DNA of 64,000 nucleotides from the NCBI GenBank assembly GCA_965637545.1, contig OZ281498.1:26474001-26538000 (forward strand), given 5' to 3'. The position numbers were made by a program, and so were the translations under genes. Under the pieces are notes generated by a model, which saw nothing but the letters and a program-made list of their open reading frames with translations, did no database searches and was not told the origin of the DNA. Source of the stretch: Phallusia mammillata (Eukaryota). Below are positions 8,005 through 41,500 of this stretch, piece by piece (the stretch's first letter is position 1; each line of letters starts with the position of its first letter).

Positions 8005-8065
8005 CTGTGATTGGTCGGTTTTCGGGCGCGGGAGTGACGTTTGAGAAGGAAACGCTATGATTGGT
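8005..8065 (+). promoter_or_regulatory. CCAAT-box (ATTGG) / CRE-like promoter of spliced unit A
   Basis: TGATTGGTCGG twice, a GC-rich spacer and TGACGT, immediately upstream of exon 1. The paralogous unit B has a similar ATTGG/CCAAT cluster at about 15240-15415. Confidence 0.45.
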
Positions 8066-10093
8066 CGAAAAAAAAGAAAAAAATGAGACAACTTGTTCGA
8101 TCTGTCATTCCTTTTGATCATCTCGTGGTGAAGGTAGCTGTGTCGATGAGACGACTCACCAATTGAGAATAAACAGGTAATTTGCGAGTTGTAAATTAAC
8201 TAGCCTGGTATTTGTGCAGAATAAACTCGGGTGCACACTTGTTGACTTCTGTGCATATACCAGAATAACATTTACCAGAATATGTTTGACTTATCTATCA
8301 AATACACGATATTGCTGCTGGAGCCTATGTTTCAGGTCGTCGGATGGTTTCAATCGCTTCAGAGAAACATCTACCACAGCGAAGAAGAATTACTTTATGA
8401 AACTTCCTAAAATAGGCGAGTAAATAAATTGAGTTGAGTTGAGTTGAGTTTATTTCGCTTGGTGAAAAAAAAACATAGCGACACAATTGCACTAAAGACA
8501 ATCACCAAGCCGGAAATAGCTGCGCAACGTTAAGACGTTATGGGGCGCAAAAAAGTGGAGGGCACAATTGGTGGATCATGATTAAACGCGCTGCAGCTAC
8601 ACCGTATTATAAAGCGTTATGTGGCAGGAGCTCACCAGAAAGTGAGTTAGGCGCACTGTGAGTATAACACGACTGGGGGGGGAACGTTGGTGGGACCAGT
8701 CGAGGGGGCCCTAGAAATGATTGAAGTTTATTTACTTATCTATATTTTTGGCGTTAAATGGTAATAGTTTGTATGTCCAAGTGTTGGCAGTATAAAGTGC
8801 ACTTATTCTGTCTTCGCATGTTGGCATAGTTAAATATTTCATAAACTATAGTTTACATGTTGCCTTGAATTCCAAATACTGCTTCTGCTTTGTTTTGCAG
8901 GGATTGGATTTCCGGCGGAAGCGTAACAAAGATGGGGGAACTTTCGGCTTCAAGTTAAGTTGTTTTAACACTTATATAATGCTAGGTTACCTAAAATTTT
9001 ATTTGCTGCATACACTGACGACTCATAATAGTTTGCAGAAAGTTAGTAAGAGTTTTAGGCAGAAGTGTTTAGAATGAGCGTCAAATATGCTATACATCAA
9101 AATTTAAAACAATTTACAGTTTCAATGCTGGTACATCCATGTTTATATTTACTCAAATGGTTTTGGTTTCAGATCATGACGTGACTAAGGTTTAAAGACT
9201 TCTAAATCTGAACATGACAGAAATCGCACTGAAGCTTTAATGTAAGTAAACTATAAATAGAAAACACGAGCGTTGTGAAGTTAAACATAGATTAGAATTT
9301 AAACTATCATTTATACCGTTGCTTCAACGAACAGCAAACCCGGGGTGTTGCATGATGTTTGTGCATGTTACATTGTTTTGCATGTCACGTGTGTTTGTGA
9401 GCTGCTATTCAGTTGTCAGCATCGGTAGAATTGATTAAAATTGCGCCATTCCTTTTTGGACATGTTTAACAGAATGCGATTGAGATATTAGCTTTCTATT
9501 ATATTAGTTTTAGGTTTTTTTTTATCAAACCAGAATGCTGTTGTTAGTTTTGTTGCAGACGTTCGAAGCAGCGGTCGAGCATCGGAAACAACTGCGGTGA
9601 CAAAGGTTGTGGAGAAACCCTGATCGGATCAACGTAATTGAAGCACAACATTCCAAATGTAAGTGTTTATCTTACCTAGTTATGTTACTTTTGAAGGTCG
9701 CTGGTCGCGTCAATTAAATCTAATAACTATATGATTCTATTTAAATAAGACGGAAATGCTCATGCCCTTCAATAGGCGAATGAATAAAACTTGCTACAAA
9801 AGTTATGTTATATTTTGTTTATATGCCACTGGCCGCGCACTTACCATTTATATACTTGTTTTTTTAGTCACTTCGATAACATCAGGAGAAACAACTGGGA
9901 AACATTGGTGGGACTTCGCGTGGATAGGATCCTTCAACTGGATAGGAATGACGCAATCAGCGATCGATGACGTCATCGTGCACTTTCGGTTTAACCTTCG
10001 CATGGTCATGATCCTATCGCATGTAGATGACCGTGATGACGAAACCTGCGATCGATGACGTCATCGTGTACTTTGTATTTGTCCACTAATAAA
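8040..10093 (+). ncRNA. Multi-exon putative lncRNA, unit A (paralog of unit B)
   Basis: Exons about 8040-8176, 8336-8415 (GC donor AG|GCGAGT), 8901-about 8958, 9173-9241, 9559-9658 and 9868-end. AATAAA at 10088-10093. Every ATG checked closes within about 30 codons. Confidence 0.5.
8430..8530 (-). mobile_element. LINE/SINE-like 3' tail (L2/CR1 style) in intron 2 of unit A
   Basis: On the minus strand, a CTTGGTGA...TCACCAAG stem is followed by AATAAA and an (ACTCA)n tail. Confidence 0.4.
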
Positions 10094-10722
10094 CAATCTT
10101 TCATACACGTTATATTTGGTACACTTCAAATACACATCAGCATTGTTTATCAGTTTGCGTGTGTAATATTTTGTACCAACGGTTTTATTCTGCTTTAACG
10201 CCTCTGAGCATCGTCCAAACTTTATTCTCTTATATGAATTGTTGTATATTTATATGAGCACAATCCATTTTTAGTCCTGCTTGTGTTGCTGCGAAACAAA
10301 TTTTCCTGATAACATATGTTATAGCTACATCTAATACACAGAATGATTTTTTTAACAAATAATTTCCCATAATTTTCACGATATTTCGTTCTACGTCGCT
10401 TTCGTATTTCCCTTGCTCACAACATTTTATTATTGTTAGAAAGTTCCACCCTTTTGGTCTTTGAAAATTTGCAATTTTGTCCCACGAATCTTAAAATAAA
10501 TAACATATCTCCGTTCCCCAGTAAACTTCTAAATCGTCCATTTAACGTCTGTCCTTTAGTTTGTCGTAGTAGTACCTTTTTTGCCTAACCATGTGTGTGA
10601 AACTTGTTCTTTGTTTACTTCAATAATACTAAATAATACGTTTTATTTCGATTCGGTGTGTTGTTTTTTTAGGTAAACCACCAATCAGAGCAACATCGCA
10701 AAACAGAAGAGAATTAGTTTAC

Positions 10723-10830
10723 AAAAAAATTAACCTTGGGTTGTGAGGATTCGAAGGCTTCGCGAGATTCGATCCCATGACTCACTGCTTTCTACCATTT
10801 GCTGCAAACCACTACACTAGCAACCTGCTT
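10723..10830 (-). ncRNA. tRNA-like Pol III (type 2) module 1
   Basis: A-box TAGTGTAGTGG (10819-10809), B-box-like GGATCGAATC (10775-10766), T7 terminator at 10729-10723 and TATAAAAA about 30 nt upstream. No cloverleaf. Confidence 0.5.
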
Positions 10831-10927
10831 GTTGTATATTGAATGATTCTTTTTATAACTCTAGAAGCGCAGTAAAAAACGCTCTGGTACTACAACATAT
10901 AAGGACCACTGAAAGGTGGTGTGGTCG

Positions 10928-11131
10928 TCACCAGCCGTGGTGTAGAGGTTGGTTCCTTGCTTCTCAATCCTCTCACCACTGTTCGAACCCCGGTAAAGAC
11001 AAACTCTGCCACGGTAACCGATAACACACTTTGGGTTCGAACGTTGCCCCTCTGATAGAACTCTGTGGTGATCCTTCTTGGTTGAAGTCTCTCTCCGTTG
11101 TAACAATCTCATCTCCCGCTTCCCAGTTTTT
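10928..11131 (+). ncRNA. tRNA-like Pol III module 2 (two B-boxes)
   Basis: A-box TGGTGTAGAGG 10938-10948, B-box GTTCGAACCC 10981-10990, second B-box GGGTTCGAACG 11033-11043, T5 at 11127-11131 and upstream ATATAA at about 10897. Confidence 0.55.
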
Positions 11132-11409
11132 CCCCTTCTCAATGTGTGTCACTCCACTCTCAAACCTTAAGACCGTACACCTATTTAAATGAGATCACAA
11201 TTAAAAGGTAATTTTGTACTTTTTTGGAAAACCGCCCAATTTAATACAACAAAAAAGTGGGGAATGTTGTACAGTAGTATTTTTAGACACTTTTGGGGGG
11301 CTTGAGAGGTGGAGGGCCCTTCGGGCCCTGCTTGCGCCGAAGGCGCAAGCCCTTTGTACGGAGGAGGTTGAGGGTTCTTCACATCACTTGGGGGGGGGGG
11401 GGGATCGAT

Positions 11410-11478
11410 GGCTTCGATTCGAACCATTGGCGTCGAACCGGCGCTTTTTCTATTTACCCACTACACCGCGCAAGCGCC
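11410..11478 (-). ncRNA. tRNA-like Pol III module 3
   Basis: A-box CGGTGTAGTGG (11468-11458), B-boxes GGTTCGACGC (11439-11430) and GGTTCGAATC (11425-11416). Confidence 0.5.
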
Positions 11479-11544
11479 CTTCGGTCAAAGGGCTAAACTG
11501 ACTTATGACTTGTTCTTTTCGTCGATTCTTATATCATCAAACAA

Positions 11545-11850
11545 AATATTTCTGCGTTTGAACGATCAGCGTGAGGTTCGTTAGCTTGTGGGGGGCATGG
11601 AAGCCAGTCAGGGGGATTGGGGGCACTCATGGAAATGGGTTAGGGCCATGGGGTGGCTTAGAGAGTGTTGAGATCAGAGCGGGGAGAGACCTCAATCAAG
11701 GAGGGTCACCAGTGAGTTTTATCAGAGGGGCAACGTTCGAACCCGAAGTGTGTTATCGGTTACCGGGGCAGAGTTTATCTTTACCGGGGTTCGAACAGTG
11801 GTGAGAGGATTGAGAAGCAAGGAACTAACCTCTACACCACGGCTGGTGAC
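11545..11850 (-). ncRNA. tRNA-like Pol III module 4 (inverted copy of module 2)
   Basis: A-box TGGTGTAGAGG (11839-11829), B-boxes at 11796-11787 and 11744-11734. Confidence 0.55.
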
Positions 11851-11905
11851 GAGAAACCCAGCTTTAAGTGGTCCTTATATGTTTTTTTGGTTCTAGGGTT
11901 CAGCC

Positions 11906-12000
11906 AAAAACTAAGCAGTGATGTAGCTTTTGGAATTCGAACCCAAACCTCCAGCATATGAGGACAGGATCTTCACCGCTACACCACGAGAGGTGACGGC
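11906..12000 (-). ncRNA. tRNA-like Pol III module 5
   Basis: A-box TGGTGTAGCGG (11986-11976), T-arm-like TTGGG-TTCGAAT-TCCAA and T5 at 11910-11906. The 5' flank CGTCACC...CG is shared with modules 2 and 4. No acceptor or anticodon stem. Confidence 0.55.
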
Positions 12001-12249
12001 AAACCCACCCAAAAATGATACATTTGTGAGTTAGACGATTCCTTCCCGAAAAAAATAACAAATTTTGGGAGAGGGTTAGAACTACAAACCATAAGTTCTA
12101 TCGACCAAGCAGCTTACCATTAGACCACAATGGACACGAAATCGCAGGGCGGGTTTCCTTAATGTTATCGATTTTCTTTTCTTACCTATTATTGTCTTAA
12201 TTTTTGGACACACAGACCATACATGCAGACGATTTTTTGGTGGTTGGGC

Positions 12250-12350
12250 AAGCAGCTCGTTAGTACAGTGGTTATGCAGGCAGGTAGTTAGGTTGAGAGT
12301 AAGGCAGACAGGCAGGCAGTAAATCTCCAATTCACTGGTTCGAACCTCTG
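12250..12350 (+). ncRNA. tRNA-like Pol III module 6 (long A-B spacing)
   Basis: A-box TAGTACAGTGG 12261-12271 and B-box GGTTCGAACC 12337-12346. The upstream ATTTTTTGGTGGTTGG resembles the upstream flank of module 5. Confidence 0.45.
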
Positions 12351-13355
12351 AAAGGTCGAAAGGCTGGATAGAAGTTCACAGAAAGTCTTACAGAAGGGCT
12401 GCCTGTCCGCTTGCAGAGGAACTGACTCAAGTGACGTAGGAAGGCTGCAAACCGACGTTTTTAGCCAACGGCTTCAACTGTAAAGTTGTTGTTTTTTGAC
12501 GCAACCACAACAAGTGTGCAACCACAACACTGTGGACATATGTGACCATAGCAACGTTACTTAATGTTGTAGTTGGATCGGAGTACGACAATTCTGGTTC
12601 TAATCCCACCGGAAGTCTCAAAATCTGCTGATAGGAAGTTGTGTAAGGTCCAAATCTTTTTGCTCTTACGTTCTAATTTTACAGATTTTTGTTTGTTTGT
12701 TGACCTCCCGTTACGACTGACTTGGGATCTACACTGAAGCCTATCCAACAATACGGAAATATGGGGTCTAACAAGAATAAATATGGTATAACGGCATCAA
12801 GCCAATGGAGGATAAAAATGACATAAAAAACGGCAACCTAAAATAGCGTATATTATAGCATAGAATGTAGAAGCATAACTTGAAAACATACTACAATGAA
12901 AGATGTTAAGTACAAACAAAGACCAAAACCAATAAAATTACAAAAAGACACAATTATGAGTCTTTAAATATGTAACCTAACATAGAATATAGTATAGAAT
13001 AACGAAACACACCTAGAATAAACACAGTGCTATATGTGTACACAAATTAACGGCAAAACAACGTTTTAAGTAAACAAATAAAATAACAATCAAGAAACAA
13101 GTATGAGTAAAACGCACACAAAAATCAGCAACAGTTAAATAAACGTTCAACAGTGTCTGTACGCATGCCAAAAGTTTGGTTATAATTCAGAACTATTAAC
13201 AAAATAATATAAGTAAGCATTGCCAAAATTGACGATGAACAAGAACTAAATTACATAAATATTTTAGAACGTTAGAATTTACAAGAAACGACAAAACGCA
13301 AAAATATAATTACGATACAAATGTAGCTTTAACTTATTCAACACACAAAGTTGGT

Positions 13356-15260
13356 TTTATTTAAGCGAACACAGAAATGTGAAAACAAAACACAAGTTCG
13401 ATGTTCTTCGGAAAGTAAGTTCTTCATCGGGAACAGAGCGTCCGCTGATTGTATGGTTATTGTTCCAAGTCTGAATATGATAGGAGTGCTTCAACTTGTG
13501 GCCAACATCGTCCATAGAATGAACTCCAATCTTCACTCGACATCGGAGCTCCTGAAACAGAAACATACAAGAGACAAAACAATGCAATTCCATACTTTCA
13601 TATAGATCGCTTAACATATTCGCAAAATACAATATACTGAAAGCTAGACAGTGTGCACCATGTTGGCTATCAGCAACCTAATTGAAAAAAGTAAATTGTT
13701 CGGCTATAATTTGCTGCATACAAACGCCTTAAGTTCATTAAGTGTTAAAATAATTTTAATAATGCGCTTACTTATTAATATGAATGATTTAACCGATGCT
13801 GACAACTGAATAGCCGCTCCAACACACAAGCGACATGCAAAACAATAAATGTAACATGCACAAGCATCATGCAAAACAACAACAGGCTTGCTATTCGTTG
13901 CAGCAACGGCTAAAGAGTCACAACTATTATTAATCCCATCTAATTCATTGGTTCATTTGTAAACATTTTATTATAGAAACTCCCGAACCGGCACTTATGC
14001 AGCAAAACGTCTATCTAAAAGAATATAATTCATGTAGATTTGCCTCAACACGTACCTGTATATAGTTCCAATTCATCCAATGGTCAGTTCAAGCGCAAAT
14101 CCGACTCCATTACGCAATGCCTTCACGACATACAGGAGATCTGCAGCAAAACACAAATATTAATATCTGACGAATTTTAGTGCATACAAAATAAAGTAAT
14201 AAAATTAATCACTTCTAACTCTACTCCTGCCTCACAGCTCTTTAGCTTACTCTGTGTTACGTTGTATCTGTAGATTTAACATTACCCTGGTTACTTAACT
14301 TATTAAGTATTTCCGATGTATGTAGTTCCCATTCATCTAGTGATCAGTCCAATGCCGATATTATTCCCCAGTGTCTTAACCGCAAACGGGAGATCTGCAA
14401 TAACCAATGTAAATATTAAAGTTCGATTGCTGTTGGTTTTAGAAATGAAAATAAAATAATATCAGTGCATATTTGACGCTCCGTTTGTTAACGCTTCTAA
14501 TCTTTACTCCTGCCTCACAACTAGTAAGCTAAACTCAAAACAAACGACTGTTACAAACCAGGGAACGCCAAATAAGCAACATAACATTTAACTTTCTGGT
14601 TACTTAACTTAATTAGGCCTTTCCGATCTTTCCATCTTCTTCGATCACTCCGCCTCCAGTAATTGTCTGCAAAACAAAATATAAGCAGTACCAGGAATTT
14701 GACATAACGTAATATTAATTACGAAAAGCTTAACTATATACCAACATGTGAAGACAGGATAAGTGCACTTTTATACTATTTCCCCATGTTGGCACCTACA
14801 TCTAATATTAAGTGATACAAGTTAATAGATATCATATAAAAATACATTTACTCGCCTGTTTTCGGAAGTGTGTGTTGTGTGCCAACTAAGCCCTCTTCCG
14901 TAAGAACGATGTTTCAGCGTCCAGCCAATCAATTCCCGAAGCCATCCGACGACCTGAAACAATGTGATCCAGCAGCAGTATATAGTGTATTTGAAAAGTG
15001 AATTAAACATAAACGCATAACTTATTATTACAGGTATCAGTGCGAAGTAAACAAGTGTGCACCCGAGTTTACTTCTACAAAGACACCAAACAAGTTGATT
15101 TACAACTCGCAAATTACCTGTTTATTCTCAATTAGTGAGTCGTCCCATTGACACAGCTACCTTCACCAAGTTGTTCACAAGGAATGACAGATCGAAGGCG
15201 CAAGGACAAAGTCGCCTCACTTTTTTTCTTTTTCTTTCAACCAATTAGAACGTTTCTTCT
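13356..15260 (-). ncRNA. Multi-exon putative lncRNA, unit B (inverted paralog of unit A)
   Basis: Exons about 15260-15118, 14953-14856 (GC donor AG|GCGAGT), 14666-14604, 14394-14295, 14140-14056 and 13551-about 13356 (AATAAA). Exon 1, intron 1 and intronic blocks align with unit A. No long ORF. Confidence 0.5.
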
Positions 15261-16799
15261 CAAACGTCATATGGGCGCTCTTCAACCGTCCAATGACAGG
15301 CTTTATTGCATCAATCAGTGAATTCCACTTCGGGCTGGTTGATTGATTACGAGAGGCAAAAATCTTGGAATGATTGGAGGCTGAACTGTTGTGACGTGGC
15401 TTGACTTGATTGGTTCTTGTGACACAATTGCTTGCTGGTAGAGTCCGAAGTTCGTTAGGATTTGTAACCAAACAGCACAAATAGGTTTAGCCATCCGTTT
15501 AATTGTCCCGTTATCGTAAAAATGTAATGCAATTTCATTAAAGGAAAAGTTTTATTTTACTTGGTGTGTTGTTGCGTAGACGAAATAAGTATTAAAAACG
15601 TTGTTATGCTTCGTTTTCCTTTTCCAACGACATTAAATTTTGTGCCACTGGGCGACTAAACATACAACCAGCTTCAAACATTCTGGCAATTAACATATTT
15701 AGAAGCAGTCTGTACATGTATATAGCTGCCTACTTCATATAAATCCAAAGCAAATGTTTAGCCCAGTGGCTCCCAAACTTTTTCGGCAAATTTCTCCCTT
15801 AGCAGTTTAAACATTTTCATTTCTCCCTAATATACTACGTAATAGATGCTAAACAATACAAAGATCATTAAACATTGTTTTTTTTATCAACTTTACAGGT
15901 TATATTTCCAGAGCTGAAGCGTCTATTTACAAAGCACATGTAAAAATTAAAGTAAATTTTCCCCTCAAGTTTTAAAATCCATCTCTTGGGAGGAATTCCT
16001 TCTTAAAAACAAGATGACAAGAGACGTCTGTGCTTAAATATAGCTGCTAATTTCTTTTCATTTGCCCTCATGACATAGAACTCAAAGATACAGAAGCAAA
16101 ATGTTTAATATTAAAAATGCAAGTAAGAAAATGAAACTATTTTACCACACTTTACAGACAGTAACATGAAAAACAAACTTAAATGAGATGAAAACAAGAA
16201 CATAATCACACATATGCATGGTTTGTCACAATTTGGTGTAAGAGTTATACCCACTTGTTCAACGTACTGTACTGGCATTTTCCTAAATTTTATTGTCTTT
16301 TTGACATGCTTTTAGTGCTACATTTTTATTAGTGACTTTTTTGTTGATGGACATGGTCTAAAAGAAATTCTATGTGTTGTTTATCTCTCATCTTTCAGAA
16401 GGGTAAGACACAGTTTTGTCACACAATATATCAGAATTCATTTGTAAACCAAAAAACTTGCTATATTAAAAATATTTAAAAGTAGACGGTTTTCAATGGA
16501 AACAGGTTCGGAAGCCCTTTGTGAGAAAAGTCTTGACAATTAGGGATGATTTATTATTTTTTGGTAATGCTAATATTATTAGAAGCCAACAAAAGACTTT
16601 TTACAAACCATTTCCTCATATGTAAGCAGGTTTCTGTCGCACGCAGCCACCACTATTATTTATCCTGTCACTACCTTTACATGTATACAGGAAAAAACAT
16701 AACAAAGGGAACAATGGAAGCAACAGTACGATATCACTGCATAAAAATATATATCGACGCACAGTGTAAGCCAATAACCCTGTGCAACCTAAGCAAAAA

Positions 16800-28054: not shown

Positions 28055-31000
28055 ATGAAAACCTTGTGTATAATCGTTTTGTCACTATTCTGTCGTTCAG
28101 TCTCAATTGTACGACCTGGTAAGTAAGAAAGTATCAGTTACTCCTTATTTGCAATCAAACTTGTACCGCAGCGGTTACTTGTACTGTATTGATGTGGTGT
28201 CGTGTTTACCTAAATGATAAATTTTGACCCATCGTTTCCAACTTATTTTAAGATGATGTACAGTATTTACTTTTATTGTTGTCTTTTAAATGGATTATAA
28301 CAGGCAAACACAAATTTAATGCTTTTAGGATTGTTATTACAAGTTGCATATTTTTTGCAGGTTCTTCACAAATAATTTGCCCCAGCAGAGATCTAAATCT
28401 CATCGAGTCTGGCAGAAAATGTCGGAAACCGTGTTCAAGTGATTCAGATTGTAGAGGGCGCCTCAAGCGGTGCCGATGTGACGATGTTTGTGGCATGTCG
28501 TGTTTCCGCCCAAGTAAGTTGATGGTAATCGAATTAAAAAATGAATTGTCAGGTAATATCTGTAAACACGAGCAGAAGAATTTGAGATTTTCCTTTTGTG
28601 ACGGTTTTAAGACACCTTCGTTTCACGAAATTAAGTTACGCAGGTGGAACCCTGGCAGAACGAAAATAAAGCAAATGATTGTGTAATATGTTAGAGTAAA
28701 ATGCATGTGAAAGGTTTCGATCTTAATTTTATCGTAGGGTGGGTAATATAATTGCAAAAAGTTGAACTTATCGGAGAAAATTAAATTGCTGATGTGAATG
28801 GTTTCTCTTTGATGTATTGCGCTTTTATCGTTATTTTTTCTTAATATTTTTTTTTCTTAATATAATATTTTTCCCTTGAAATCATTCAGTCGTGAATAGA
28901 TTGGTCAACACTTACTGTCCATTTCCAATATCTCCATTCAACGAGTGTAACCGAAGTAACATAAAAGTATTAGTTTGCACAGTTAAAATCGTAAAAGTAT
29001 TTGATCACTGATATCAATTTAATGACCTTCAGAAACCTTGTTTATGAATGTGATCAAAGAGTTTGTTTAATGCTGAGCTTATTGTCGCCATTTGCGTTAA
29101 CAGATGCGGTGTGTGTCAGTTTAAAGGTTGAGTTTGGAAGAGTCATTTATCGTTCCCGAAAGTACGGATCTCAGGCGGGCACAGCGGCACGGTGTTTAAG
29201 TAAGTTGTTTCAGTCGTGAACAGATTGGTCAACACTTACTGTCCATTTCCAATATCTCGATTCAACGAGTGTAACCGAAATAACATAAAAGTATTAGTCT
29301 GCACAGTTAAAATCGTAAAAGTATTTGATCACTGATATCAATTTGATCACTGATATGTGTTTAAGTAAGTTGTTTGGTCGCTTCAGGTTCTTTAGTCAGT
29401 TCATACCAAGAAGATATTCGAACTATCGTTTTGTCTTGGTAAATTCTTATGTTTCAATTCTGTTCCGTTCAAAGCCACTTGGTTTGTAGCGACAAACTTC
29501 AGTATGTATATTTGTGACAGTTTTACGATGCAATGAACCAGTGGCACCTAATCATGGTTCTGTTGCAACCGAAGGAGTTGATTTCAATTACGGATCTCGG
29601 GTTGATTTTGCCTGTGACCCAGGTTATGAGAACATTGGAAGTGCTTGGGCAATTTGCAATGAAAACGCTACTTGGAAAGGAATGGCAAACTGCACGGGTA
29701 AGCAAATTTTAGTTTAAAGCAAGAAGTATGCTATTGTTATACACCTAATCTTTGAACCATACAAAGCCGGTTTACTGTGAGCAAGCCTTTATATTCCATT
29801 AAAAATCCCAACATCAAACGGCAAATAAAATCTTCAAAAAACACATTTTCTGATAAGAATAAGTTTAACGAAGTTTTGAAAATAACCGAATGAAAAAGTT
29901 GTTCAAATATTTCAATTTAATTTGCGAATGTTGCAGATTACCTAATCAAAGCATGCGCATTATTTACGTTTTAGTGAAACCGCATCAGGCAAATTTGTTT
30001 TAACAGTCTAATATTTTCATGTAGGTATAAAACTGAAGTGTGGGCAAACTGTAAACCACACAAGCACTTCAACTTCCCGATCCGTTGGTCGAGTTGTCGG
30101 AGGAATTAATGCAGAAAGGTCTTGGCCATGGCAAGCTTTAATTATGGTCAAGCACGGAACAGTTTATAACGTAAGCAACGGTACAGTTTTATTGAGCCCA
30201 AAACTGTTCATGTTGAACAAACAGCTTGACCGATTTTACTTTTATTCCTCGGTCTTGATGGCTAACCTGGTCGATTTTGTGTAATTGTTTAGAGCTTCGC
30301 GAGTAGTTTTGCCGGTGGAACTCTGATCAATCAACATTGGGTTCTAACAGCAGCACATATATTTGATCGTTACTCCAACATTGAGAATTGGACAAAACGC
30401 TTCGTAGTGGCCGTAGGTAATAAAAGATAAAAAAATACTTGCAAGTTGCGTTGTATGTTACATGACAACAGAGTTATATTCTTATTTTTGAAAGGGATTT
30501 TTAGAAGACCTGACAGAAGAAGTAACATCGACTCTTATGTAATTGTGTTTCAACCGAGAAATATTGTTGTACATGACCGGTTCGACCGATCTGATCGACA
30601 TGAAAGAAGCAATTATGATTACGATGTTGCACTGGTAAGATTAAAAGTTTGTTAAATATTAAACGACCTCAAATCATATCAAATCGAGCAGGGTACAGTT
30701 GGACCTAGGCCAACGCAACTGAGCACATCAAAATCAGTGTTAGTTTTGAGTCGATGAAGTGACCTTCAAAAACATTTACAGGAGGACTCCAGCCGTGTGA
30801 GTTAACAAGGGATCCTCCTTTGCGGACACAAAAGGAAAAGAGACGTATCATTTGACCATAGTTTTGTAAATGTTTTTTTTTTCAGATTCGCGTGGGCATA
30901 GGACTTAGTACCATCAAAGAAAATAGACTGTGGAATTGGACCGACAACGCACCTAAGTTTAACGGGACAATTCCACTCTCAACCCATGTGAACCCTATAT

Positions 31001-32590: not shown

Positions 32591-35500
32591 ATGGAATAAA
32601 GTGTCCGAGTTTCGAAGTTGAAAACGGTCGCCTAGTTCCACAACAAAGTGTATACGCCCATGGCTCAACTGTTACCATCGAATGCAATACTGGTTATCAA
32701 CTAAATGGGACAAATTCTCAAACCTGCTCAGAGGATGGTCTGTGGGTTAACGATCAACCAAGGTGTATAGGTATGTTGAAATTTATCAACAGATTAATGG
32801 ACATCAATGGGGGCTGGGTTTTTAAGAAGAAACTTAATCCGATTATGTTCTTGTTTTCCTACAACTCATATATTTTAAGTTTTTCACAAACAAAATACTT
32901 AAACCGTCTTTGCAGACCCGAAGTGTCCAGATTTTCCGCGCTGGATTGACAATGGCGAGATTAGGATCACGTATTCTCGTGAAAGTCAAGGAAATCACCT
33001 CCCTGGGACTAGAGTCAGTTACACATGCCAAGATGGTTACAAGATTAACAGCACAAGTTATCAAACTTCGGTCACATTTACCTGTCTTACGACCAAACGA
33101 TGGAATGCCAACCCAAGTACCGTATCATGTGTTAGTAAGTCAGTTAATGAACAGAATATGTTGTCCGCAAAAGACAAAAATTAATTGCCTGTCAGGTCAT
33201 TTGATGTGCTACACGTTTTTGCAGAAAAAACTTGTCCACCGATGAGAAGAATCATCAACGGACAAATGAATCCTGTATTTCAAGAGAGGTTGCGCCACCC
33301 AGTGGGCACATCTGTTTCGTTTACATGTTCATCTGGCTACAGGTTGACGAAAACAAGACCACTTCGTTGTCGGGATTCCGAAAGTTGGTCTAGAACCCAA
33401 CCAAAGTGTCGAGGTAATATGTTGTAATGATGTTAAGTCTCGAATTATCCTGTGTGATCTGTGATCAGTTCAGATGGACACAAAATTATTGTTGCCCTAT
33501 GATTTTTCTAGTTGCATATAGCCTACTTACTTGGCATGTCGAAAAGTAATCGATTTATTGCCTCTGACGTAATAATGGAGCGTTCCGGTTTTTCTTCAAA
33601 TCAAATTCACAATGACAGCGTTAAACGGTATTCGTTTTCGATTACAAATACCCTTGCAGATATTCACCACACAAATTCAGTTTATTCGTATTCAAATATA
33701 AAAAGTACATAATTAATAAACATAAGCATAAACATATACAGCAAACAAGTCAATTGAAAGTTACACTGAACATCAGCCAAACAAATCAACTACTGAACAC
33801 TAACACTAGGTCAAGGTCTAAGCTGCAACAGCTTGGCAAACTGCCACATAACAAAACACTGATGCATAAATAATTTAACTCCTGCATCAAATAAAATTCA
33901 CTAATGCATATAAGGTACAACATGTCAAGGGCGGACAAAATATACTTTTGCTGACCACATTTTACTAAGTGGCGATTTCAAACACAATACGTTTTTTAGT
34001 TTACTTTCAATAAACTCTTTGACAAAACTGTGCTGTGGCGATGTATTTGCAGAATTGCAGAAACGTTAGGATTATTCCGTGTTTTATTTAAAAACAAACG
34101 CTTTTGCAGTGATACGGTGCAGGAGTTTCAGAGTGGCCGAAGGTCGTCTGATTCCACAACAAAATTCCTACGCTACTGGTTCAACGGTTTCTATCGAGTG
34201 CAATGAGGGCTTCACAGTAAATGGGATGAATTCCCGAAGCTGCTCTCAGAGTGGTGATTGGGTTGGAAAAATACCGATATGTACAGGTACGTTAGAATTT
34301 GTTAACAGAATAATGAACATCAATGTGGGCTGGGTTTTTAAGAAGAAACTTAATCCGATTATGTTCTTATTTTAAGGAAACAAACGACATTTAATTTTAA
34401 GTGTTGAAATGTGTGTAACTGACCCTTGTAAAGTGGTTAAACAAAACACACTTAATTCTCTTCATATGACTCGAATAGACACACACTTTCACAAACAAAT
34501 TACTTAAACCGTCTTTGCAGACCCGAAGTGTTCAGATTTTCCGCGCTGGATTGACAATGGCGAGGTTAGGATTACGTATTCTCGTGAAAGTCAAGGACAT
34601 CGCCTCCCTGGGACTAGAGTCAGTTACACATGCCGAGATGGTTACAAGATTAACAGCACAAGTTATCAAACTTCGGTCACATATACCTGTCTTACAACCA
34701 AATGATGGAATGCCAACCCAAGTACCGTCTCATGTGTTAGTAAGTCAGTTAATAAACAGAATATGTTGTCCGCAAAACACAAAAATTAATTGCCTGTCAG
34801 GTCATTTGATGTCTTCCGCGTTTTTGCAGAAAAAACTTGCCCACCATTGAGAAGAATCATCAACGGACAAATGAATCCTGTATTTCAAGAGGGGTTGCGC
34901 CACCCAGTGGGCACATCTGTTACGTTCACATGTTCATCTGGCTACAGGTTGACGAAAACAAGACCACTTCGTTGTCGGGATTCCGAAAGTTGGTCTAGAA
35001 CCCAACCAAAGTGTCGAGGTAATATGTTGTAATGATGTTAAGTCTCGAATTATCCTGTGTGATCTGTGATCAGTTCAGATGGACACAAAATTATTGTTGC
35101 CCTGAGATTTTTCTAGTTGCATATAGCCTACTTACTTGGCATGTCGAAAAGTAATCGATTTATTGTCTGTGACGTAATAATGGAGCGTTCCGGTTTTTCT
35201 TCAAATCAAATTCACAATGACAGCGTTAAACGGTATTCGTTTTCGATTACAAATACCCTTGCAGATATTCACCACACAAATTCAGTCTATTCGTATTCAA
35301 ATATAAAAAGTACATAATTAATAAACATAAGCATAAACATATACAGCAAACAAGTCAATTGAAAGTTACACTGAACATCAGCCAAACAAATCAACTACTG
35401 AACACTAACACTAGGTCAAGGTCTAAGCTGCAACAGCTTGGCAAACTGCCACATAACAAAACACTGATGCATAAATAATTTAACTCCTGCATCAAATAAA

Positions 35501-38500
35501 ATTTACTAATGCATATAAGGTACAACATGTCAAGGGCGGACAAAATATACTTTTGCTGACCACATTTTACTAAGTGGCGATTTCAAACACAATACGTTTT
35601 TTTAGTTTACTTTCAATAAACTCTTTGACAAAACTGTGCTGTGGCGATGTATTTGCAGAATTGCAGAAACGTTAGGATTATTCCGTGTTTTATTTAAAAA
35701 CAAACGCTTTTGCAGTGATACGGTGCAGGAGTTTCAGAGTGGCCGAAGGTCGTCTGATTCCACAACAAAATTCCTACGCTACTGGTTCAACGGTTTCTAT
35801 CGAGTGCAATGAGGGCTTCAGACTAAATGGGACGAATTCCCGAAGCTGCTCTCAGAGTGGTGATTGGGTTGGAAAAATACCGATATGTACAGGTATGTTA
35901 GAATTTGTTAACAGAATAATGAACATCAATGTGGGCTGGGTTTTTAAGAAGAAACTTAATCCGATTATGTTCTTATTTTAAGGAAACAAACGACATTTAA
36001 TTTTGAGTGTTGAAATGTGTGTAACTGACCCTTGTAAAGTGGTTAAACAAAACACACTTAATTCTCTTCATATGACTCGAATAGACACACACATTCACAA
36101 ACAAATTACTTGAACCGTCTTTGCAGACCCGAAGTGTCCAGATTTTCCGCGCTGGATTGACAATGGCGAGGTTAGGATCACGTTTCCTCTTGAAAGTCAA
36201 GGACATCACCTCCCTGGGGCTAGAGTCAGTTACACATGCCGAGATGGTTACAAGATTAACAGCACAAGTTATCAAACTTCGGTCATATATACCTGTCTTA
36301 CAACCAAACGATGGGATACCAACCCAAGTACCGTCTCATGTGTTAGTAAGTCAGTTAATAAACAGAATATGTTGTCCTCAAACGACGGAATTTAATTGCC
36401 TGTCAGGTTATTTGATGTCTTCCGCGTTTTTGCAGAAAAACTTGTCCACCATTGAGAAGAATCATCAACGGACAAATGAATCCTGTATTTCAAAAGGGGT
36501 TGCGCCACCCAGTGGGCACAGTTGTTTCGTTTACATGTTCATCTGGCTACAGGTTGACGAAAACAAGACCACTGCGTTGTCGGGATTCCGAAAGTTGGTC
36601 TAGAACCCAACCAAAGTGTCGAGGTAATATGTTGATCATGTTCAGTCTCGAATTATCTTGTGTGATCTGTGATCAGTTCAGATGGGCACAAAATTGTTGT
36701 TGCCCTGAGATTTTTTTAGTTGTATATACTTACTTGGCATGTCGAAAAGTAATCGATTTATTATCTGTAACATAATAATAGAGTGTTCCGGTTTTCTTCA
36801 AAAAATTTTTACAATGACAGCGTTAAACGGTATTGGTTTTGGATTACAGAAACTCTTACAGATATTCACAACTCCTGCATCAAATAAAAATTACTAATGC
36901 ATAAAAGGTACAACAAGTCAAGGAGGACAAAATTTATTTCTGCGAACACATTTTACTAAGTGGCGATTTCAAACACAATATGTTTTTTAGTTAACTTTCA
37001 ATAAACTCTTTGACAAAACTCCGCTGTGGTGATATATTTGCCGAATTACAAAAACATTAAGATTATTCCGTGTTTAATTTTTGAAAAACAAAACGCTTTT
37101 GCAGTGATGCGGTGCAGGAGTTTCAAAGTGGCCGAAGGTCGTCTGATTCCACAACAAAATGCCTACGTCAGTGGTTCAACTGTTTCTATCGAGTGCAATG
37201 AGGGCTTCACACTAAATGGGGTGAATTCCCGACGCTGCTCTCAGAGTGGTGATTGGGTTGGAGAAACACCGAAGTGTACAGGTATGTTAAAATTTGTTAA
37301 CAGATTAATGAACATCAACGTGGGCTGGGTTTTTAAAAAGAAACTTAATCCGTTTATGTTCTTGTTTTCCTACGACTCATATATTTTAAGCAAACAAACG
37401 AAATATCGAGTGTTGAAATGTCCGGAACTGAAAAGATAAGGGCAGTGAAGCCTTTCTTCTGTTTCTGTGTAATTTTATTTCCAAGCTTAGTTCCGAAGTG
37501 TGCTGGAGTCACTTCTCCTCCCCTTTTCCTAATATATGTTTTTTTATTTATTTTCGAGACAGTTTTACGATGCAATGAACCAGTTGCTCCTGATCATGGT
37601 TCCGTCAACTCTCAGGGAATGGATTTCATCTACAGATCTCGTGTTGAGTTCAACTGCAATCATGGTTATGAGAACATTGGAAGCAATTCAACAGTTTGCA
37701 ACGAAAACGCTACTTGGGAAGGAGCTGCGAATTGCATCGGTGAGCAAAAATACTTAAATTTATAAAAGCTTTGAGATGGCTGCTACGAGATTATAATAAA
37801 ACTTGCGAGGTACATTTCACTACCGTATGCTAATGTCGTCCTGCCTATTGAAATGGTTGATATGGTGTATCGCCATACACTAAAATTTGCCTCTCGTTTT
37901 CGCACTTGCTCTTGCAAGCAATCCACATTCACACACGACGAAATGTAGCAGTTGTTCATTTCGAATCAAAAACGAATTGCTTTACCACATGTGGTGTAAG
38001 CAACTTTTGCAAAGATAAACAAATTACCTTTGTCAAATGTTTTCAACAAACCGTATTTTTAAAGTCAATCTGGAATGCGATTTTGAAACCTACCGAACAC
38101 CAACATGTGGATTTACAAACCTACATAATGGTTGGACACGAACCCAAGTTCAACACAACAGACTTGGTCGACAAGGTACTTAGTTTGTGATTTTTGTACA
38201 TTACAGTTACATTCAAAGTGGAGTGTGAAAAACGCCCATCAAGCTATTTTTAACTAGTATTATTATTTCAACTTTTATCTATAAATTATCTATTCAGAAA
38301 AAGACATTTTATAGTTTTTAAATGCGACCCTTGTAAAGTGGCTACGAATGCTTTTCGCCACTTGACAGAGTTCAAAAGCTAAACTTTTATCGCAGGATAC
38401 ATTGCAGTGGCCCGAGCGTACCGAGATTTTCATCCCACTCTCACATCACCACCAGTGCCTAGAAACAATGACAAATGTTTCAAGTTCTTTTACAAGCTCG

Positions 38501-41500
38501 AAATTGCTGGTGCAGCGATGAACGTGAAGATTGGGGACCAGATAAAGTAACCTTTTGCAGTTTTGTCAACATTTTACAAGTGATATTTACTTTGATGACT
38601 GCAATGATTGGGACTATAAATGGGCCAAATGCCATGTTCAAGTGCTTGTCCTGCAACTCAATTCCACAATTTATTTGTGTGTTGCAGAAGGGAGTATCGA
38701 ACTCGACGTGCTGGATGGCAAGCTGAAGAACTAAACGTGTCACAAAGTGATACGGAAGCTACCGTGGCGTTTGTGGCAGCTTCTGGCACTGTGCATTTGG
38801 ATGACATAACTGTGCTAAATGAATCGTGTAGTAAGTAAATTAAGCTCTAGGCTCTTGGAAGCCCATTTACTAACCTCAGATAACTACAACAAATCAGTAG
38901 CGTCTGAATGGGGAGAGCTCTATAACAACCAGTGATGGATTAAGCACTAAGTAAACAAATCATTTACTTATGGTCAAACCACCAATGTCCACAGATTTGT
39001 ACACTTTATATTCAAGTGCTATTGTAGGTTACTAACTGCTCCACTGATTTTGCACGTTCCTACTATTTTGTTACACTGTCTACGAATCTGTTCAAAGTTT
39101 AACGATGAATATAATGGTCCAAATAGATGTAAAAAGCGACATGCTAAATTATTCAATTGTTTTGGCATTGTCTTATTCTTGCGTATTGTATTTTTTACGA
39201 GATTAGTTATGTCACATCAATTTAGTCTTTGTTACACGAATCACATGATTTATACATAAAACTCCTTGCAGATGTATGTTGGTAAAAACCATTTGGTCGA
39301 TGTTAAGAGATGGTATTTGACTTATAAATACCACGCTTTTCTGTTAATTTTTTATTTATTTTTTCTTATACATTTTACAGTCATTTGTACATTTCATGCA
39401 ACGCGTGTGTTTTAGGTGACGAGTGTCAAGTGAGGCCGTGTTTAAACGGTGGGATCTGTCGTGATGAAGTTGACAGCTATACGTGTTTTTGCCGCCATGA
39501 TTTTACTGGACGCACTTGTTCTACAGGTACAGAAAATCATTGATTATAAAAGTAAATGTTTACCAAATGTATGTTATTGCACGTTTACGTGAATTTAGCT
39601 ATGTTGCAGTGCTATTTTCTAGATGTTGGTTAAAAAAACGATTATATTTCTTCGCTACGTGTAAACAAAATAGACGCTATGTGTTTTCCGACGCCAACCG
39701 GTTGTAAGGAAAAAAATCACCTTGCATCGCAAAATTTTATGTTTCTCAACTCACGGCGACAAAAAAACTTTTGAGTTTTTTGATGAATCTCTAATCTAAT
39801 GTATAAATCTGCAATGCATTCTAAAATGGTTTGTTGACAAGAACAACAGGTGCTGAAACAAGTTGAGAATCATTTCATTTAAACAAAACACATTTAAGTA
39901 TCTGTATATGACTCCTTCGAATAGACACACACTTTCACAAACAAATTACTTAAACCGTCTTTGCAGACCTGAAGTGTCCAGATTTTCCGCGCTGGATTGA
40001 CAATGGCGAGGTTAGGATCACGTATCCTCTTGAAAGTCATGGACATCACCTCCCTGGGGCTAGAGTCAGTTACGCATGCCAAGATGGTTACAAGATTAAC
40101 AACACAAGTTATCAAACTTCGGTCATATATACCTGTCTTACAACCAAACGATGGGATGCCAACCCAAGTACCGTCTCATGTGTTAGTAAGTCAGTAAATA
40201 AACAGAATATGTTGTCCGCAAAAGACAAAAATTAATTGCCTGTCAGGTCATTGGATGTGCTACACGTTTTTGCAGAAAAAACTTGTCCACCATTGAGAAG
40301 AATCATCAACGGACAAATGAATCCTGTATTTCAAGAGGGGTTGCGCCACCCAGTGGGCACAGTTGTTTCCTTCACATGTTCATCTGGCTACAGGTTGACG
40401 AAAACAAGACCACTTCGTTGTCGGGATTCCGAAAGTTGGTCTGGAACCCAACCAAAGTGTCGAGGTAATATGTTGTAATCATGTTAATTTTCGAATTATC
40501 ATGTGTGATCTGTGATCAGTTCAGATGGGCACAAAATTATTGTTGCCCTGAGATTTTTTTAGTTGTATATACTTAAGTAATAGATTTATTGTCGGTAACG
40601 TAATAATAGAGCGTTCCTGTTTTTCTTCAAATTAAATTCACAATGACAACGTTAAACGGTATTCGTTTTGGATTACAGAAACTCTTACAGATATTCACAA
40701 CACAAATTCAGTTTATTCGTATTTTCAATATAAAAAATACATAATTAATAAACATAAACATAAACAGCAAACAAGTCAATTGAAAGTTAAACTGAACATC
40801 AGCCGAACAAATCAACTACTGAACACTAACACTAGGTCAAGGTCTAAGCTGCAACACCTTGGCAAACAGTCACATAACAAAACACTGATGCATAAATAAT
40901 TTAACTCCTGCATCAAATAAAAATTACTAATGCATATAAGGCACAACAAGTCAAAGGGCGGACAAAATTTATTTCTGCAGACCACATTTCACTAAGTGGC
41001 GATTTCAAACACAATACGTTTTTTAGTTTACTTTCAATAAACTCTTTGACAAAACTGCGCTGTGGTGATATATTTGCCGAATTACAAAAACGTTAGGATT
41101 ATTCCGTGTTTTATTTAAAAACAAACGCTTTTGCAGTGATACGGTGCAGGAGTTTCAGAGTGGCCGAAGGTCGTCTGGTTCCACAACAAAATTCCTATGC
41201 TACTGGTTCAACGGTTTCTATCGAGTGCAATGAGGGCTTCACATTAAATGGGACGAATTCCCGAAGCTGCTCTCAGAGTGGTGATTGGGTTGGAGAAATA
41301 CCGAGGTGTACAGGTATGTTAGAATTTGTTAACAGATTAATGAACATCAATGTGGGCTGGGTTTTTAGTAAGAAACTTAATCTAAATATGTTCTTGTTTT
41401 CCTACGACTCATATATTTTAAGCAAACAAACGAAATATCGAGTGTTGAAATGTCCGGAACTGAAAAGATAAGGGCAGTGAAGCCTTTCTTGTGTTTCTGT

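What the first reader, a model, noticed from the sequence alone, without database searches (positions are those of the whole stretch)
10723..12350. Cluster of six non-tRNA Pol III (A-box/B-box) modules in about 1.6 kb
Seen: six A-boxes (TRGTGTAGNGG-like) each paired with a GTTCGAA-type B-box. In five, the spacing is tRNA-like (about 31-33 nt). Modules 1, 2 and 5 have nearby oligo-T terminators; modules 1, 2 and 4 have TATA-like elements about 30 nt upstream. Two or three modules carry a second B-box. The internal sequences differ and do not fold into cloverleaves, though modules 1 and 3 show short end-to-end pairing. Known: A-box plus double B-box with a terminal panhandle is typical of vault RNAs and adenoviral VA RNAs; clustered B-boxes can act as TFIIIC boundary elements; tRNA-derived SINE heads look similar. 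Inference: a lineage-specific family of small Pol III RNAs, or an insulator.
Basis: partly seen in the sequence, partly recalled or inferred. Interest (0 to 1): 0.7.

Follow-up and report, generated by a model that had tools for sequence, protein, structure and literature searches.

The report
Decayed tRNA-derived gene cluster, segmentally amplified
The six "Pol III modules" are real, but they are worn-down copies of transfer-RNA genes (three of them derived from tRNA-Glu) at the centre of a DNA palindrome that was copied about 25 times along with a large duplicated gene block. Whether they are still transcribed could not be tested.

Summary
The A-box/B-box pairs are in the sequence and are far more frequent than chance. 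They are not six independent inventions. Modules 2 and 4 are the two arms of a 204-nt inverted repeat. Module 5 is their diverged tandem neighbour. A seventh and an eighth unit lie beside them. None scores as a tRNA or matches any Rfam family.

None is a dispersed SINE. Every module occurs only at about 22 paralogous loci in a 2.4-Mb segmental-duplication zone near the end of contig C5, which is a decaying Sushi/WAP gene array. They also occur at three large palindromes near the end of C3. A profile search added one remote relative: a 12-unit, roughly 165-bp tandem array on C3 with the same unit order.

Modules 2, 4 and 5 align to this genome's own tRNA-Glu(CTC). Genuine copies of that tRNA sit in tandem arrays with about 162-bp spacing.

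The best reading is a decayed tRNA-gene cluster that became palindromic and was then amplified passively. The boxes are somewhat better kept than the rest between old paralogs, and one hairpin shows two compensatory changes. The scan had already noted tRNA-like Pol III units elsewhere in this genome.

The parts
10723..10830 (-). M1: tRNA-like unit. A-box 10809-10819, B-like boxes 10765-10775 and 10746-10756, T7 10723-10729.
   Evidence: ARAGORN calls it a pseudo-tRNA only at 80% of its thresholds. The fold is not stable (z +1.35). The 3' part is missing in 6 of 21 C5 paralogs and the unit is absent from the C3 copies.
10894..11097 (+). M2: left arm of the inverted repeat. TATAAG 10898-10903, CGTCACC 10926-10932, A-box 10938-10948, B-box 10981-10991, and its palindromic partner 11034-11043.
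   Evidence: It aligns to the genome's tRNA-Glu(CTC) (z 6.0).
11098..11679 (.). Unique 582-nt centre of the palindrome. It holds M3 (- strand, A-like 11458-11468, B-boxes 11429-11439 and 11415-11425), a G run of about 14-15 bases from 11390, and GC-rich mini-palindromes at 11314-11328 and 11330-11350.
   Evidence: (M3 fold z -2.9, driven by the GC mini-hairpins). The B-box and G-run part varies among the C5 copies.
11680..11883 (-). M4: right arm of the inverted repeat, the same unit as M2. A-box 11829-11839, B-box 11786-11796, partner 11734-11743.
   Evidence: It aligns to tRNA-Glu(CTC) positions 7-37 (z 7.8).
11906..12000 (-). M5: diverged tandem neighbour of M4, 147 nt start to start. CGTCACC 11992-11998, A-box 11976-11986, B-box 11932-11943 with an intact T-arm, T5 11906-11910.
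   Evidence: (D1, I2). It aligns to tRNA-Glu(CTC) positions 7-61 (z 3.9). It is a pseudo-tRNA at 80% ARAGORN thresholds.
12049..12140 (-). M7: a further tRNA-like unit, not GTTCGAA-type. A-box 12117-12127, B-like 12073-12083, T7 12049-12055.
   Evidence: It is homologous to unit U1 of the remote C3 locus L058, which scores 18.5 bits with the Rfam tRNA model.
12250..12365 (+). M6: A-box 12261-12271 and B-box 12337-12348, 77 nt apart.
   Evidence: It is 98-100% identical among the C5 copies and 96-97% identical to two C3 copies, but the neighbouring sequence is kept equally well. The fold is not stable (z +0.17).
12555..12625 (+). M8: a weak tRNA-like remnant outside the finding. A-like 12568-12576, B-like 12596-12606.
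   Evidence: It has no significant similarity to the other units.
8035..15269 (.). Remains of a large old palindrome centred on the finding. The outer inverted patches are 8035-8351 against 14938-15269 and 9316-9426 against 13792-13909.
   Evidence: In the C3 copies L026 and L027 both arms survive over at least 3.7 kb (86-96%) around a spacer of about 650 nt.

Best explanation
The locus is a decayed cluster of tRNA-derived genes (a 'tDNA' cluster). It began as a short tandem run of tRNA genes of the kind this genome still has, namely alternating tRNA-Lys/tRNA-Glu arrays with about 162-bp spacing. The copies lost their acceptor stems and cloverleaf but kept the D-loop and T-loop blocks, which are the Pol III A and B boxes. 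On the - strand the order is M7, M5, M4. The cluster then became the centre of a palindrome, which created M2 as the mirror image of M4. The whole block was afterwards copied passively about 22 times on C5, as part of an 80-130-kb segmental repeat that carries Sushi/WAP exons. Older copies lie on C3. What is shown: the motifs, the inverted repeat, the confinement of all copies to duplication blocks, the tRNA-Glu relationship, and the collinear remote paralog. What is inferred: the order of events, and that the units are now relics. Because the boxes are largely intact, TFIIIC may still bind and some units may still be transcribed, but nothing here shows it.
For: No tRNA and no Rfam family is found, whereas ARAGORN finds genuine tRNA-Lys(TTT)/Glu(CTC) arrays in the same genome. 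M4, M2 and M5 align to that tRNA-Glu (z 7.8, 6.0, 3.9) and not to tRNA-Lys. The head profile R2 hits tRNA-Glu in L028 (12.8 bits, E 0.006). M2 and M4 form a 204-nt inverted repeat. M4 and M5 are direct neighbours 147 nt apart. Every module is found only at about 21-26 places, on C5 24.9-27.3 Mb and C3 29.9-30.9 Mb. Homology between the loci runs through the full 10 kb fetched, at 94-97%. WAP-exon ORFs, many with stop codons, lie 17-29 kb downstream in at least 8 units, and Sushi exons are in the window. C3-to-C5 identity is no higher in the modules than in the 13.8-15 kb flank. Boxes are no better kept than spacers among the close paralogs. M1 and M3 are partly deleted or variable in some copies. 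The remote locus L058 has the same unit order, U1-U2-array, with the last unit amplified to 12 copies of 161-172 bp. tDNA clusters with pseudogenes and rapid turnover are common in eukaryotes (PMC2888827).
Against: Between the two old paralogous loci the A and B boxes are 86% identical (57/66), against 61% (113/185) for the rest of the units (Fisher p 1e-4). Hairpin 1 of M2/M4 keeps 9 of 11 pairs in the remote array, with two double (compensatory) changes. Both results hint at past or present constraint. Both are weakened by ascertainment: the boxes were chosen in the window copy and the alignment was fitted to the model. After allowing for that, the excess is marginal. Only two tRNA isotypes were available for comparison, so 'Glu' is the better of two, not the best of all. 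Expression was not examined.
Confidence: 0.6

Rival explanations
1. The units are active, lineage-specific Pol III genes. They are tRNA-Glu-derived and give small RNAs of about 90-310 nt. They are kept as clusters and are present in high dosage because of the amplification.
For: M1, M2, M4, M5 and M7 have A and B boxes at tRNA-like spacing. T5-T7 runs lie 18-25 nt after the B box in M1, M5 and M7, and TATAAG lies about 25 nt upstream of the conserved CGTCACC in M2 and M4. The units of the remote 12-copy array each keep TTTAAA, both boxes and a T4 run. Boxes are kept better than the rest between old paralogs. Helix 1 shows two compensatory pairs. The M2 core fold has z -2.6.
Against: No Rfam family matches. 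There is no module-specific conservation among the 25 close paralogs. M1 and M3 are truncated or variable in several copies. M2 and M4 have no T4 run for 137 and about 245 nt after the B box. M1 and M6 do not fold better than shuffles. The conservation tests carry ascertainment bias. There are no expression data.
Confidence: 0.2
2. The B-box cluster acts as a TFIIIC-bound boundary, like ETC sites or tDNA insulators, between neighbouring copies of the amplified Sushi/WAP gene unit. It may or may not be transcribed.
For: About 11 B-box-like sites lie in 1.9 kb, several without a good A box. There is one locus per duplication unit, upstream of the + strand WAP and Sushi exons. tDNA repeats have been proposed as boundary elements elsewhere (PMC4041453).
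Against: This rests only on position and motifs. Many of the adjacent gene copies are pseudogenised, so there is little to insulate. The same units also occur in a plain tandem array (L058) with no such context shown. Binding cannot be tested here.
Confidence: 0.1
3. The modules are debris of tRNA-derived SINEs, or of the abundant Penelope-style retroposon with a tRNA-like gene that earlier agents reported in this genome. On this reading the inverted arm is an insertion scar.
For: The genome has tens of thousands of rough tRNA-like candidates (35,004 and about 62,000-65,000 first-look candidates). Earlier scan notes describe such retroposons with inverted arms. The units lack acceptor stems, as SINE heads do.
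Against: There are no dispersed copies. BLAST reaches down to 79% identity. The 20-base head motif with up to 2 mismatches gives 73 hits, all in the C5 and C3 blocks, against 0-1 for the reversed control. Profiles R1 and R2 find only clustered relatives, followed by a sharp drop in score. The inverted repeat continues for at least 3.7 kb in the C3 copies, so it is a palindrome and not an insertion scar. No A-rich tail or LINE-like tail was seen.
Confidence: 0.06

Closest known systems
tDNA clusters: tandem tRNA genes with interspersed tRNA pseudogenes, as surveyed in 'Genomic organization of eukaryotic tRNAs' (PMC2888827). In this genome, the tRNA-Lys(TTT)/tRNA-Glu(CTC) array on C1.
   Same: Several tRNA-related units lie within 1 kb of each other, on the same and on opposite strands, with spacing of about 130-165 bp. 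They show similarity to tRNA-Glu and fast structural turnover, and they are associated with rearranged DNA.
   Different: No unit here passes a tRNA model. Acceptor stems are gone. M2 and M4 have gained a hairpin in which the A-box region pairs with the bases just 5' of the B box. The cluster is multiplied by a palindrome and by segmental repeats of about 100 kb, not by unit-level tandem duplication. The exception is the remote array L058.
tRNA-derived SINE heads
   Same: Both have an internal A box and B box, have lost the cloverleaf, and carry unrelated downstream sequence.
   Different: There is no dispersal, no LINE-derived or A-rich tail, and no target-site duplications. The copy number is explained by segmental duplication.
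TFIIIC boundary elements: yeast ETC sites, fission-yeast COC sites, and human tDNA insulators or the tRNA VNTR (PMC4041453)
   Same: B boxes are clustered in an intergenic position between repeated gene units.
   Different: Only the motif and the position are known. There are no binding or chromatin data.
Vault RNA and adenoviral VA RNA
   Same: They share an A box, a B box or boxes, and a possible terminal stem. In M4, GTCACCAG can pair with CTGGTGAC about 145 nt downstream.
   Different: Rfam's library (4227 families; it includes a Vault model, RF00006, by my own knowledge) gives no match, even at E up to 10. The 'double B box' of M2 and M4 is a self-complementary pair. The units derive from tRNA-Glu.

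Membership tests
tRNA gene | A cloverleaf recognised by a tRNA model (ARAGORN, or Rfam RF00005 at 29 bits or more) | tested here: not met
   ARAGORN finds 0 genes in the window. Rfam gives no hit, even at E up to 10 over 10000-13000. Only at 80% of ARAGORN's thresholds do M1 and M5 appear, together with obvious noise. Positive control: 10 tRNAs are found in L028.
tRNA pseudogene or tRNA-derived sequence | Significant sequence similarity to a genuine tRNA of the same genome | tested here: met
   M4, M2 and M5 against tRNA-Glu(CTC) give z 7.8, 6.0 and 3.9. Against tRNA-Lys they give z 0.2, 2.2 and 0.4. Profile R2 hits tRNA-Glu in L028. The result is not significant for M1, M3, M6 and M8, and only two isotypes were available.
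Pol III type-2 (tRNA-type) promoter | An A box (TRGYNNANNNGG) and a B box (GWTCRANNC) about 30-60 nt apart on one strand | tested here: met
   M1, M2, M4 and M5 pass a strict paired-motif scan. Shuffles give 1.6 per 64 kb. M7 has a 44-nt start-to-start spacing. M3 has C in place of the first T of its A box. M6 has a 77-nt spacing.
Pol III type-2 (tRNA-type) promoter | Transcription by Pol III, ending at an oligo-T run | not testable with these tools
   T5-T7 runs follow M1, M5 and M7 within 25 nt, but such runs are common in this A+T-rich DNA.
SINE | Many dispersed copies produced by retroposition | tested here: not met
   Each module has 21-26 places, all in the C5 and C3 duplication blocks. 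The 204-nt arm gives 40 scored matches of 51 candidates, all on C5 in the same blocks, in pairs. All 73 motif hits lie in those blocks. The profile searches add only clustered relatives.
SINE | A LINE-related or A-rich 3' tail and target-site duplications | tested here: not met
   None is visible on reading the units and their flanks. No formal TSD search was made.
Vault RNA | A match to the family's covariance model (Rfam) | tested here: not met
   No family reaches its gathering score in the window. Only three unrelated snoRNA chance matches appear in 10000-13000 at E up to 10.
TFIIIC boundary element (ETC or tDNA insulator) | TFIIIC occupancy and barrier or enhancer-blocking activity | not testable with these tools
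   Only the density of B-box motifs and the position between repeated gene units are known.

The most novel reading that the evidence does not exclude
The tRNA-Glu-derived units (CGTCACC head, A box, hairpin, B box) may be a living, lineage-specific class of clustered Pol III genes or TFIIIC sites. On this reading one cluster is retained at the centre of a palindrome in every unit of an amplified Sushi/WAP gene array, and another as a 12-gene tandem array. Box conservation and the two compensatory pairs in hairpin 1 would then reflect real constraint.
Probability: 0.2. Interest if true: 0.5.

Novelty: new member of a known kind. Interest (0 to 1): 0.27.

Why it matters
The work shows how a striking cluster of Pol III promoters can arise without any new RNA family. 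A few tRNA genes decay, a palindrome mirrors them, and segmental duplication multiplies them. It also shows that in this genome tRNA-like units are not all retroposons; some are local relics of tandem tRNA arrays. If the units proved to be bound by TFIIIC or transcribed, they would be a tractable case of tRNA-gene relics reused as small-RNA genes or boundaries inside a rapidly duplicating receptor-type gene cluster. tDNA clusters have also been linked to replication-fork stalling and rearrangement (PMC2888827), which may bear on why this block became a palindrome and a duplication hotspot.

Tried and rejected

Relaxed ARAGORN: thresholds of 70-85% and the intron mode gave mostly noise.

Coding potential: Pfam scans of 20 ORFs found nothing in or around the locus. 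They found only Sushi and WAP exons farther downstream.

Conservation island: C3-to-C5 identity in the finding (0.84-0.95) is matched by the 13.8-15 kb flank (0.92-0.95). No island exists.

Box-specific conservation among close paralogs: none is visible.

Covariation among close paralogs: there are too few differences. Single changes split between wobble-compatible and pair-breaking.

Bacterial promoter and terminator scan: uninformative.

Earlier-findings look-ups by place, by sequence and by words on large repeats returned nothing for this locus.

The species was not verified here. Earlier notes call it a sea squirt.

Full report
**Observation**

Reading 10400-12700 and locating the motifs by script confirms six A-box/B-box modules.
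- M1 (- strand): A 10809-10819, B 10765-10775 and 10746-10756, T7 10723-10729.
- M2 (+ strand): A 10938-10948, B 10981-10991 and 11034-11043.
- M3 (- strand): A-like 11458-11468, B 11429-11439 and 11415-11425.
- M4 (- strand): A 11829-11839, B 11786-11796 and 11734-11743.
- M5 (- strand): A 11976-11986, B 11932-11943, T5 11906-11910.
- M6 (+ strand): A 12261-12271, B 12337-12348, 77 nt apart.

A seventh unit lies inside the finding's coordinates: M7 (- strand, A 12117-12127, B-like 12073-12083, T7 12049-12055). A weak eighth, M8, lies just outside at 12568-12606.

The clustering is well above chance.
- A strict paired-motif scan finds four modules here.
- The scan finds 12 in the whole window, and seven of the other eight are one coding motif repeated in a tandem repeat.
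- Shuffled windows give 1.6 +/- 1.3.
- Seven of the window's 13 TTCGAAC sites fall in this 1.6 kb.
- ARAGORN finds no tRNA in the window, and Rfam finds no family, even at E up to 10 over 10000-13000.

**The modules are not independent**

M2 and M4 are the two arms of a 204-nt inverted repeat (10894-11097 and 11680-11883, 91% complementary, 582 nt apart). M5 is a diverged direct neighbour of M4, 147 nt start to start. It shares the head CGTCACC...CGTGGTGTAG.GGT. M1 and M6 share modest similarity (z 5.9).

In the predicted fold of M2 and M4, the A-box region pairs with the bases just 5' of the B box. The two 'B boxes' pair with each other, because GTTCGAAC is its own reverse complement. The 'double B box' is therefore a self-complementary pair and not a vault-like promoter feature.

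**Copy number and context**

The window is G000:C5:26474001-26538000 in a 240-Mb genome. Each module was searched against the whole genome.
- Each of M1, M3, M5 and M6 is found at only 21-26 places. The 204-nt arm of M2/M4 gives 40 scored matches, in pairs at those loci.
- These places are about 22 loci on C5 between 24.91 and 27.32 Mb, mostly 81-130 kb apart, near the contig end. Three further loci lie on C3 at 29.9-30.9 Mb.
- The 20-base head motif, with up to two mismatches, gives 73 hits, all in those blocks. The reversed control gives 0-1.
- Homology among the C5 loci runs through the whole 10 kb fetched, at 94-97% with indels.

The locus is therefore part of a large segmental repeat.

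That repeat carries Sushi-repeat and WAP-domain exons on the + strand of the window. A WAP-exon ORF lies 17-29 kb downstream of the locus in at least eight units, often with stop codons. The array is thus heterogeneous and partly decayed.

In two C3 copies the inverted repeat extends to arms of at least 3.7 kb around a spacer of about 650 nt. The window keeps only the inner 204 nt and a few outer patches: 8035-8351 against 14938-15269, and 9316-9426 against 13792-13909. The finding therefore sits at the centre of an old palindrome.

**Conservation**

Among the close paralogs the modules are no better kept than the sequence between them. C3-to-C5 identity in the finding (0.84-0.95 per 200 nt) is matched by the right flank at 13.8-15 kb (0.92-0.95). 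M1 lacks its 3' part in six C5 copies and is absent from C3. The B-box part of M3 is variable.

**Remote relatives**

A covariance model of the M2/M4 core (A1, R1) was searched over the genome.
- It found the 47 paralogous copies plus one new relative: a 12-unit tandem array at C3:24961720-24963557, with a period of 161-172 bp, at 34-45 bits.
- A sequence profile of the heads of M2/M4, M5 and the array (A3, R2) found 86 strong hits, all in these places. The score then dropped sharply to weak hits (19-21 bits) clustered at C7:16.99-17.07 Mb. I could not fetch those hits.
- On the - strand the window order M7-M5-M4 is collinear with U1-U2-array in the remote locus L058. The two are old paralogous clusters.

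Between them the boxes are 57/66 identical, against 113/185 for the rest of the units (Fisher p 1e-4). Hairpin 1 keeps 9 of 11 pairs, with two double changes. These results hint at constraint, but two biases weaken them.
- The boxes were picked in the window copy. That alone predicts roughly 78% identity in the boxes.
- The alignment was fitted to the model.

I treat both results as suggestive only.

**Origin**

The genome has genuine tRNA genes in long tandem arrays. tRNA-Lys(TTT) and tRNA-Glu(CTC) alternate with about 162-bp spacing on C1 at 30.95-31.02 Mb. This has the same architecture as the L058 array, and the M5-M4 spacing is similar.
- M4, M2 and M5 align to that tRNA-Glu with z 7.8, 6.0 and 3.9. 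M5 aligns over positions 7-61, including a CTC at the anticodon position and an intact T arm.
- They do not align to tRNA-Lys.
- Profile R2 recognises tRNA-Glu in L028 (12.8 bits, E 0.006).
- Only these two isotypes were at hand.

**Interpretation**

The simplest account of all this is a small tandem tRNA-gene cluster that decayed. It was duplicated once long ago (L058), became the centre of a palindrome, and was then carried along by the segmental amplification of a Sushi/WAP gene block. tDNA clusters with pseudogenes, fast turnover and links to rearrangement are well documented (PMC2888827).

The SINE reading fails its defining test of dispersal. So does the Penelope-style retroposon reading suggested by earlier notes on this genome. 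The vault/VA reading has no model support.

Active Pol III genes or a TFIIIC boundary are not excluded. The boxes are largely intact, some units have TATA-like words and T runs, and tDNA repeats have been proposed as boundary elements elsewhere (PMC4041453).

**Verdict**

This is an ordinary kind of element (a tDNA relic cluster) in an unusual arrangement. Interest is low to moderate.

Noticed in passing
window 32600-55124 (+ strand): Tandem repeats carry Sushi (SCR) exon ORFs. A unit of about 4.6 kb is repeated about 3.7 times (37909-55124, 97-98% identical). Sub-repeats of about 1.6 kb lie at 32882-37906. A WAP-domain ORF lies at 28276-28686. Together these look like one large gene with internally duplicated Sushi exons.
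   Followed up: partly
G000:C5 24.9-27.3 Mb: A zone of about 2.4 Mb near the contig end is made of roughly 22 heterogeneous repeat units, mostly 81-130 kb long and 94-97% identical where compared. Many WAP exon copies carry stop codons. Related exons also lie at C5 23.1-24.2 Mb, on C8 at about 15 Mb, and on the small contig C70.
   Followed up: partly
L026 and L027 (G000:C3:30845235-30855234 and 30126415-30136414): Large palindromes have arms of at least 3.7 kb (86-96% complementary) around a spacer of about 650 nt. They are homologous to window 10894-15300.
   Followed up: partly
L058 (G000:C3:24961400-24963900, - strand): A 12-unit tandem array (161-172 bp, with a 333-bp higher-order period) consists of tRNA-Glu-derived units. 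Each unit has TTTAAA, an A box, a B box and a T4 run. Two other tRNA-like units precede the array; one scores 18.5 bits with the Rfam tRNA model.
   Followed up: partly
L028-L057 (G000:C1:30.95-31.02 Mb): A long tandem array of genuine tRNA-Lys(TTT) and tRNA-Glu(CTC) genes alternates with a 324-bp period and holds dozens of copies.
   Followed up: partly
G000:C7:16987075-17072073 and G000:C3:28945960-28946027: Weak full-length matches (19-21 bits) to the head profile R2 are clustered over 85 kb on C7. They may be a more remote cluster of the same unit family. They could not be fetched.
   Followed up: no
window 11314-11404: GC-rich mini-palindromes (GGGCCC-TTCG-GGCCC and GCTTGCGCC-GAAG-GCGCAAGC) and a G run of about 14-15 bases lie in the unique centre of the palindrome. 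The length of the loop and of the G run varies among the paralogs.
   Followed up: partly
window 62284-62746: A 158-bp tandem repeat has 3.1 copies with 83% matches.
   Followed up: no
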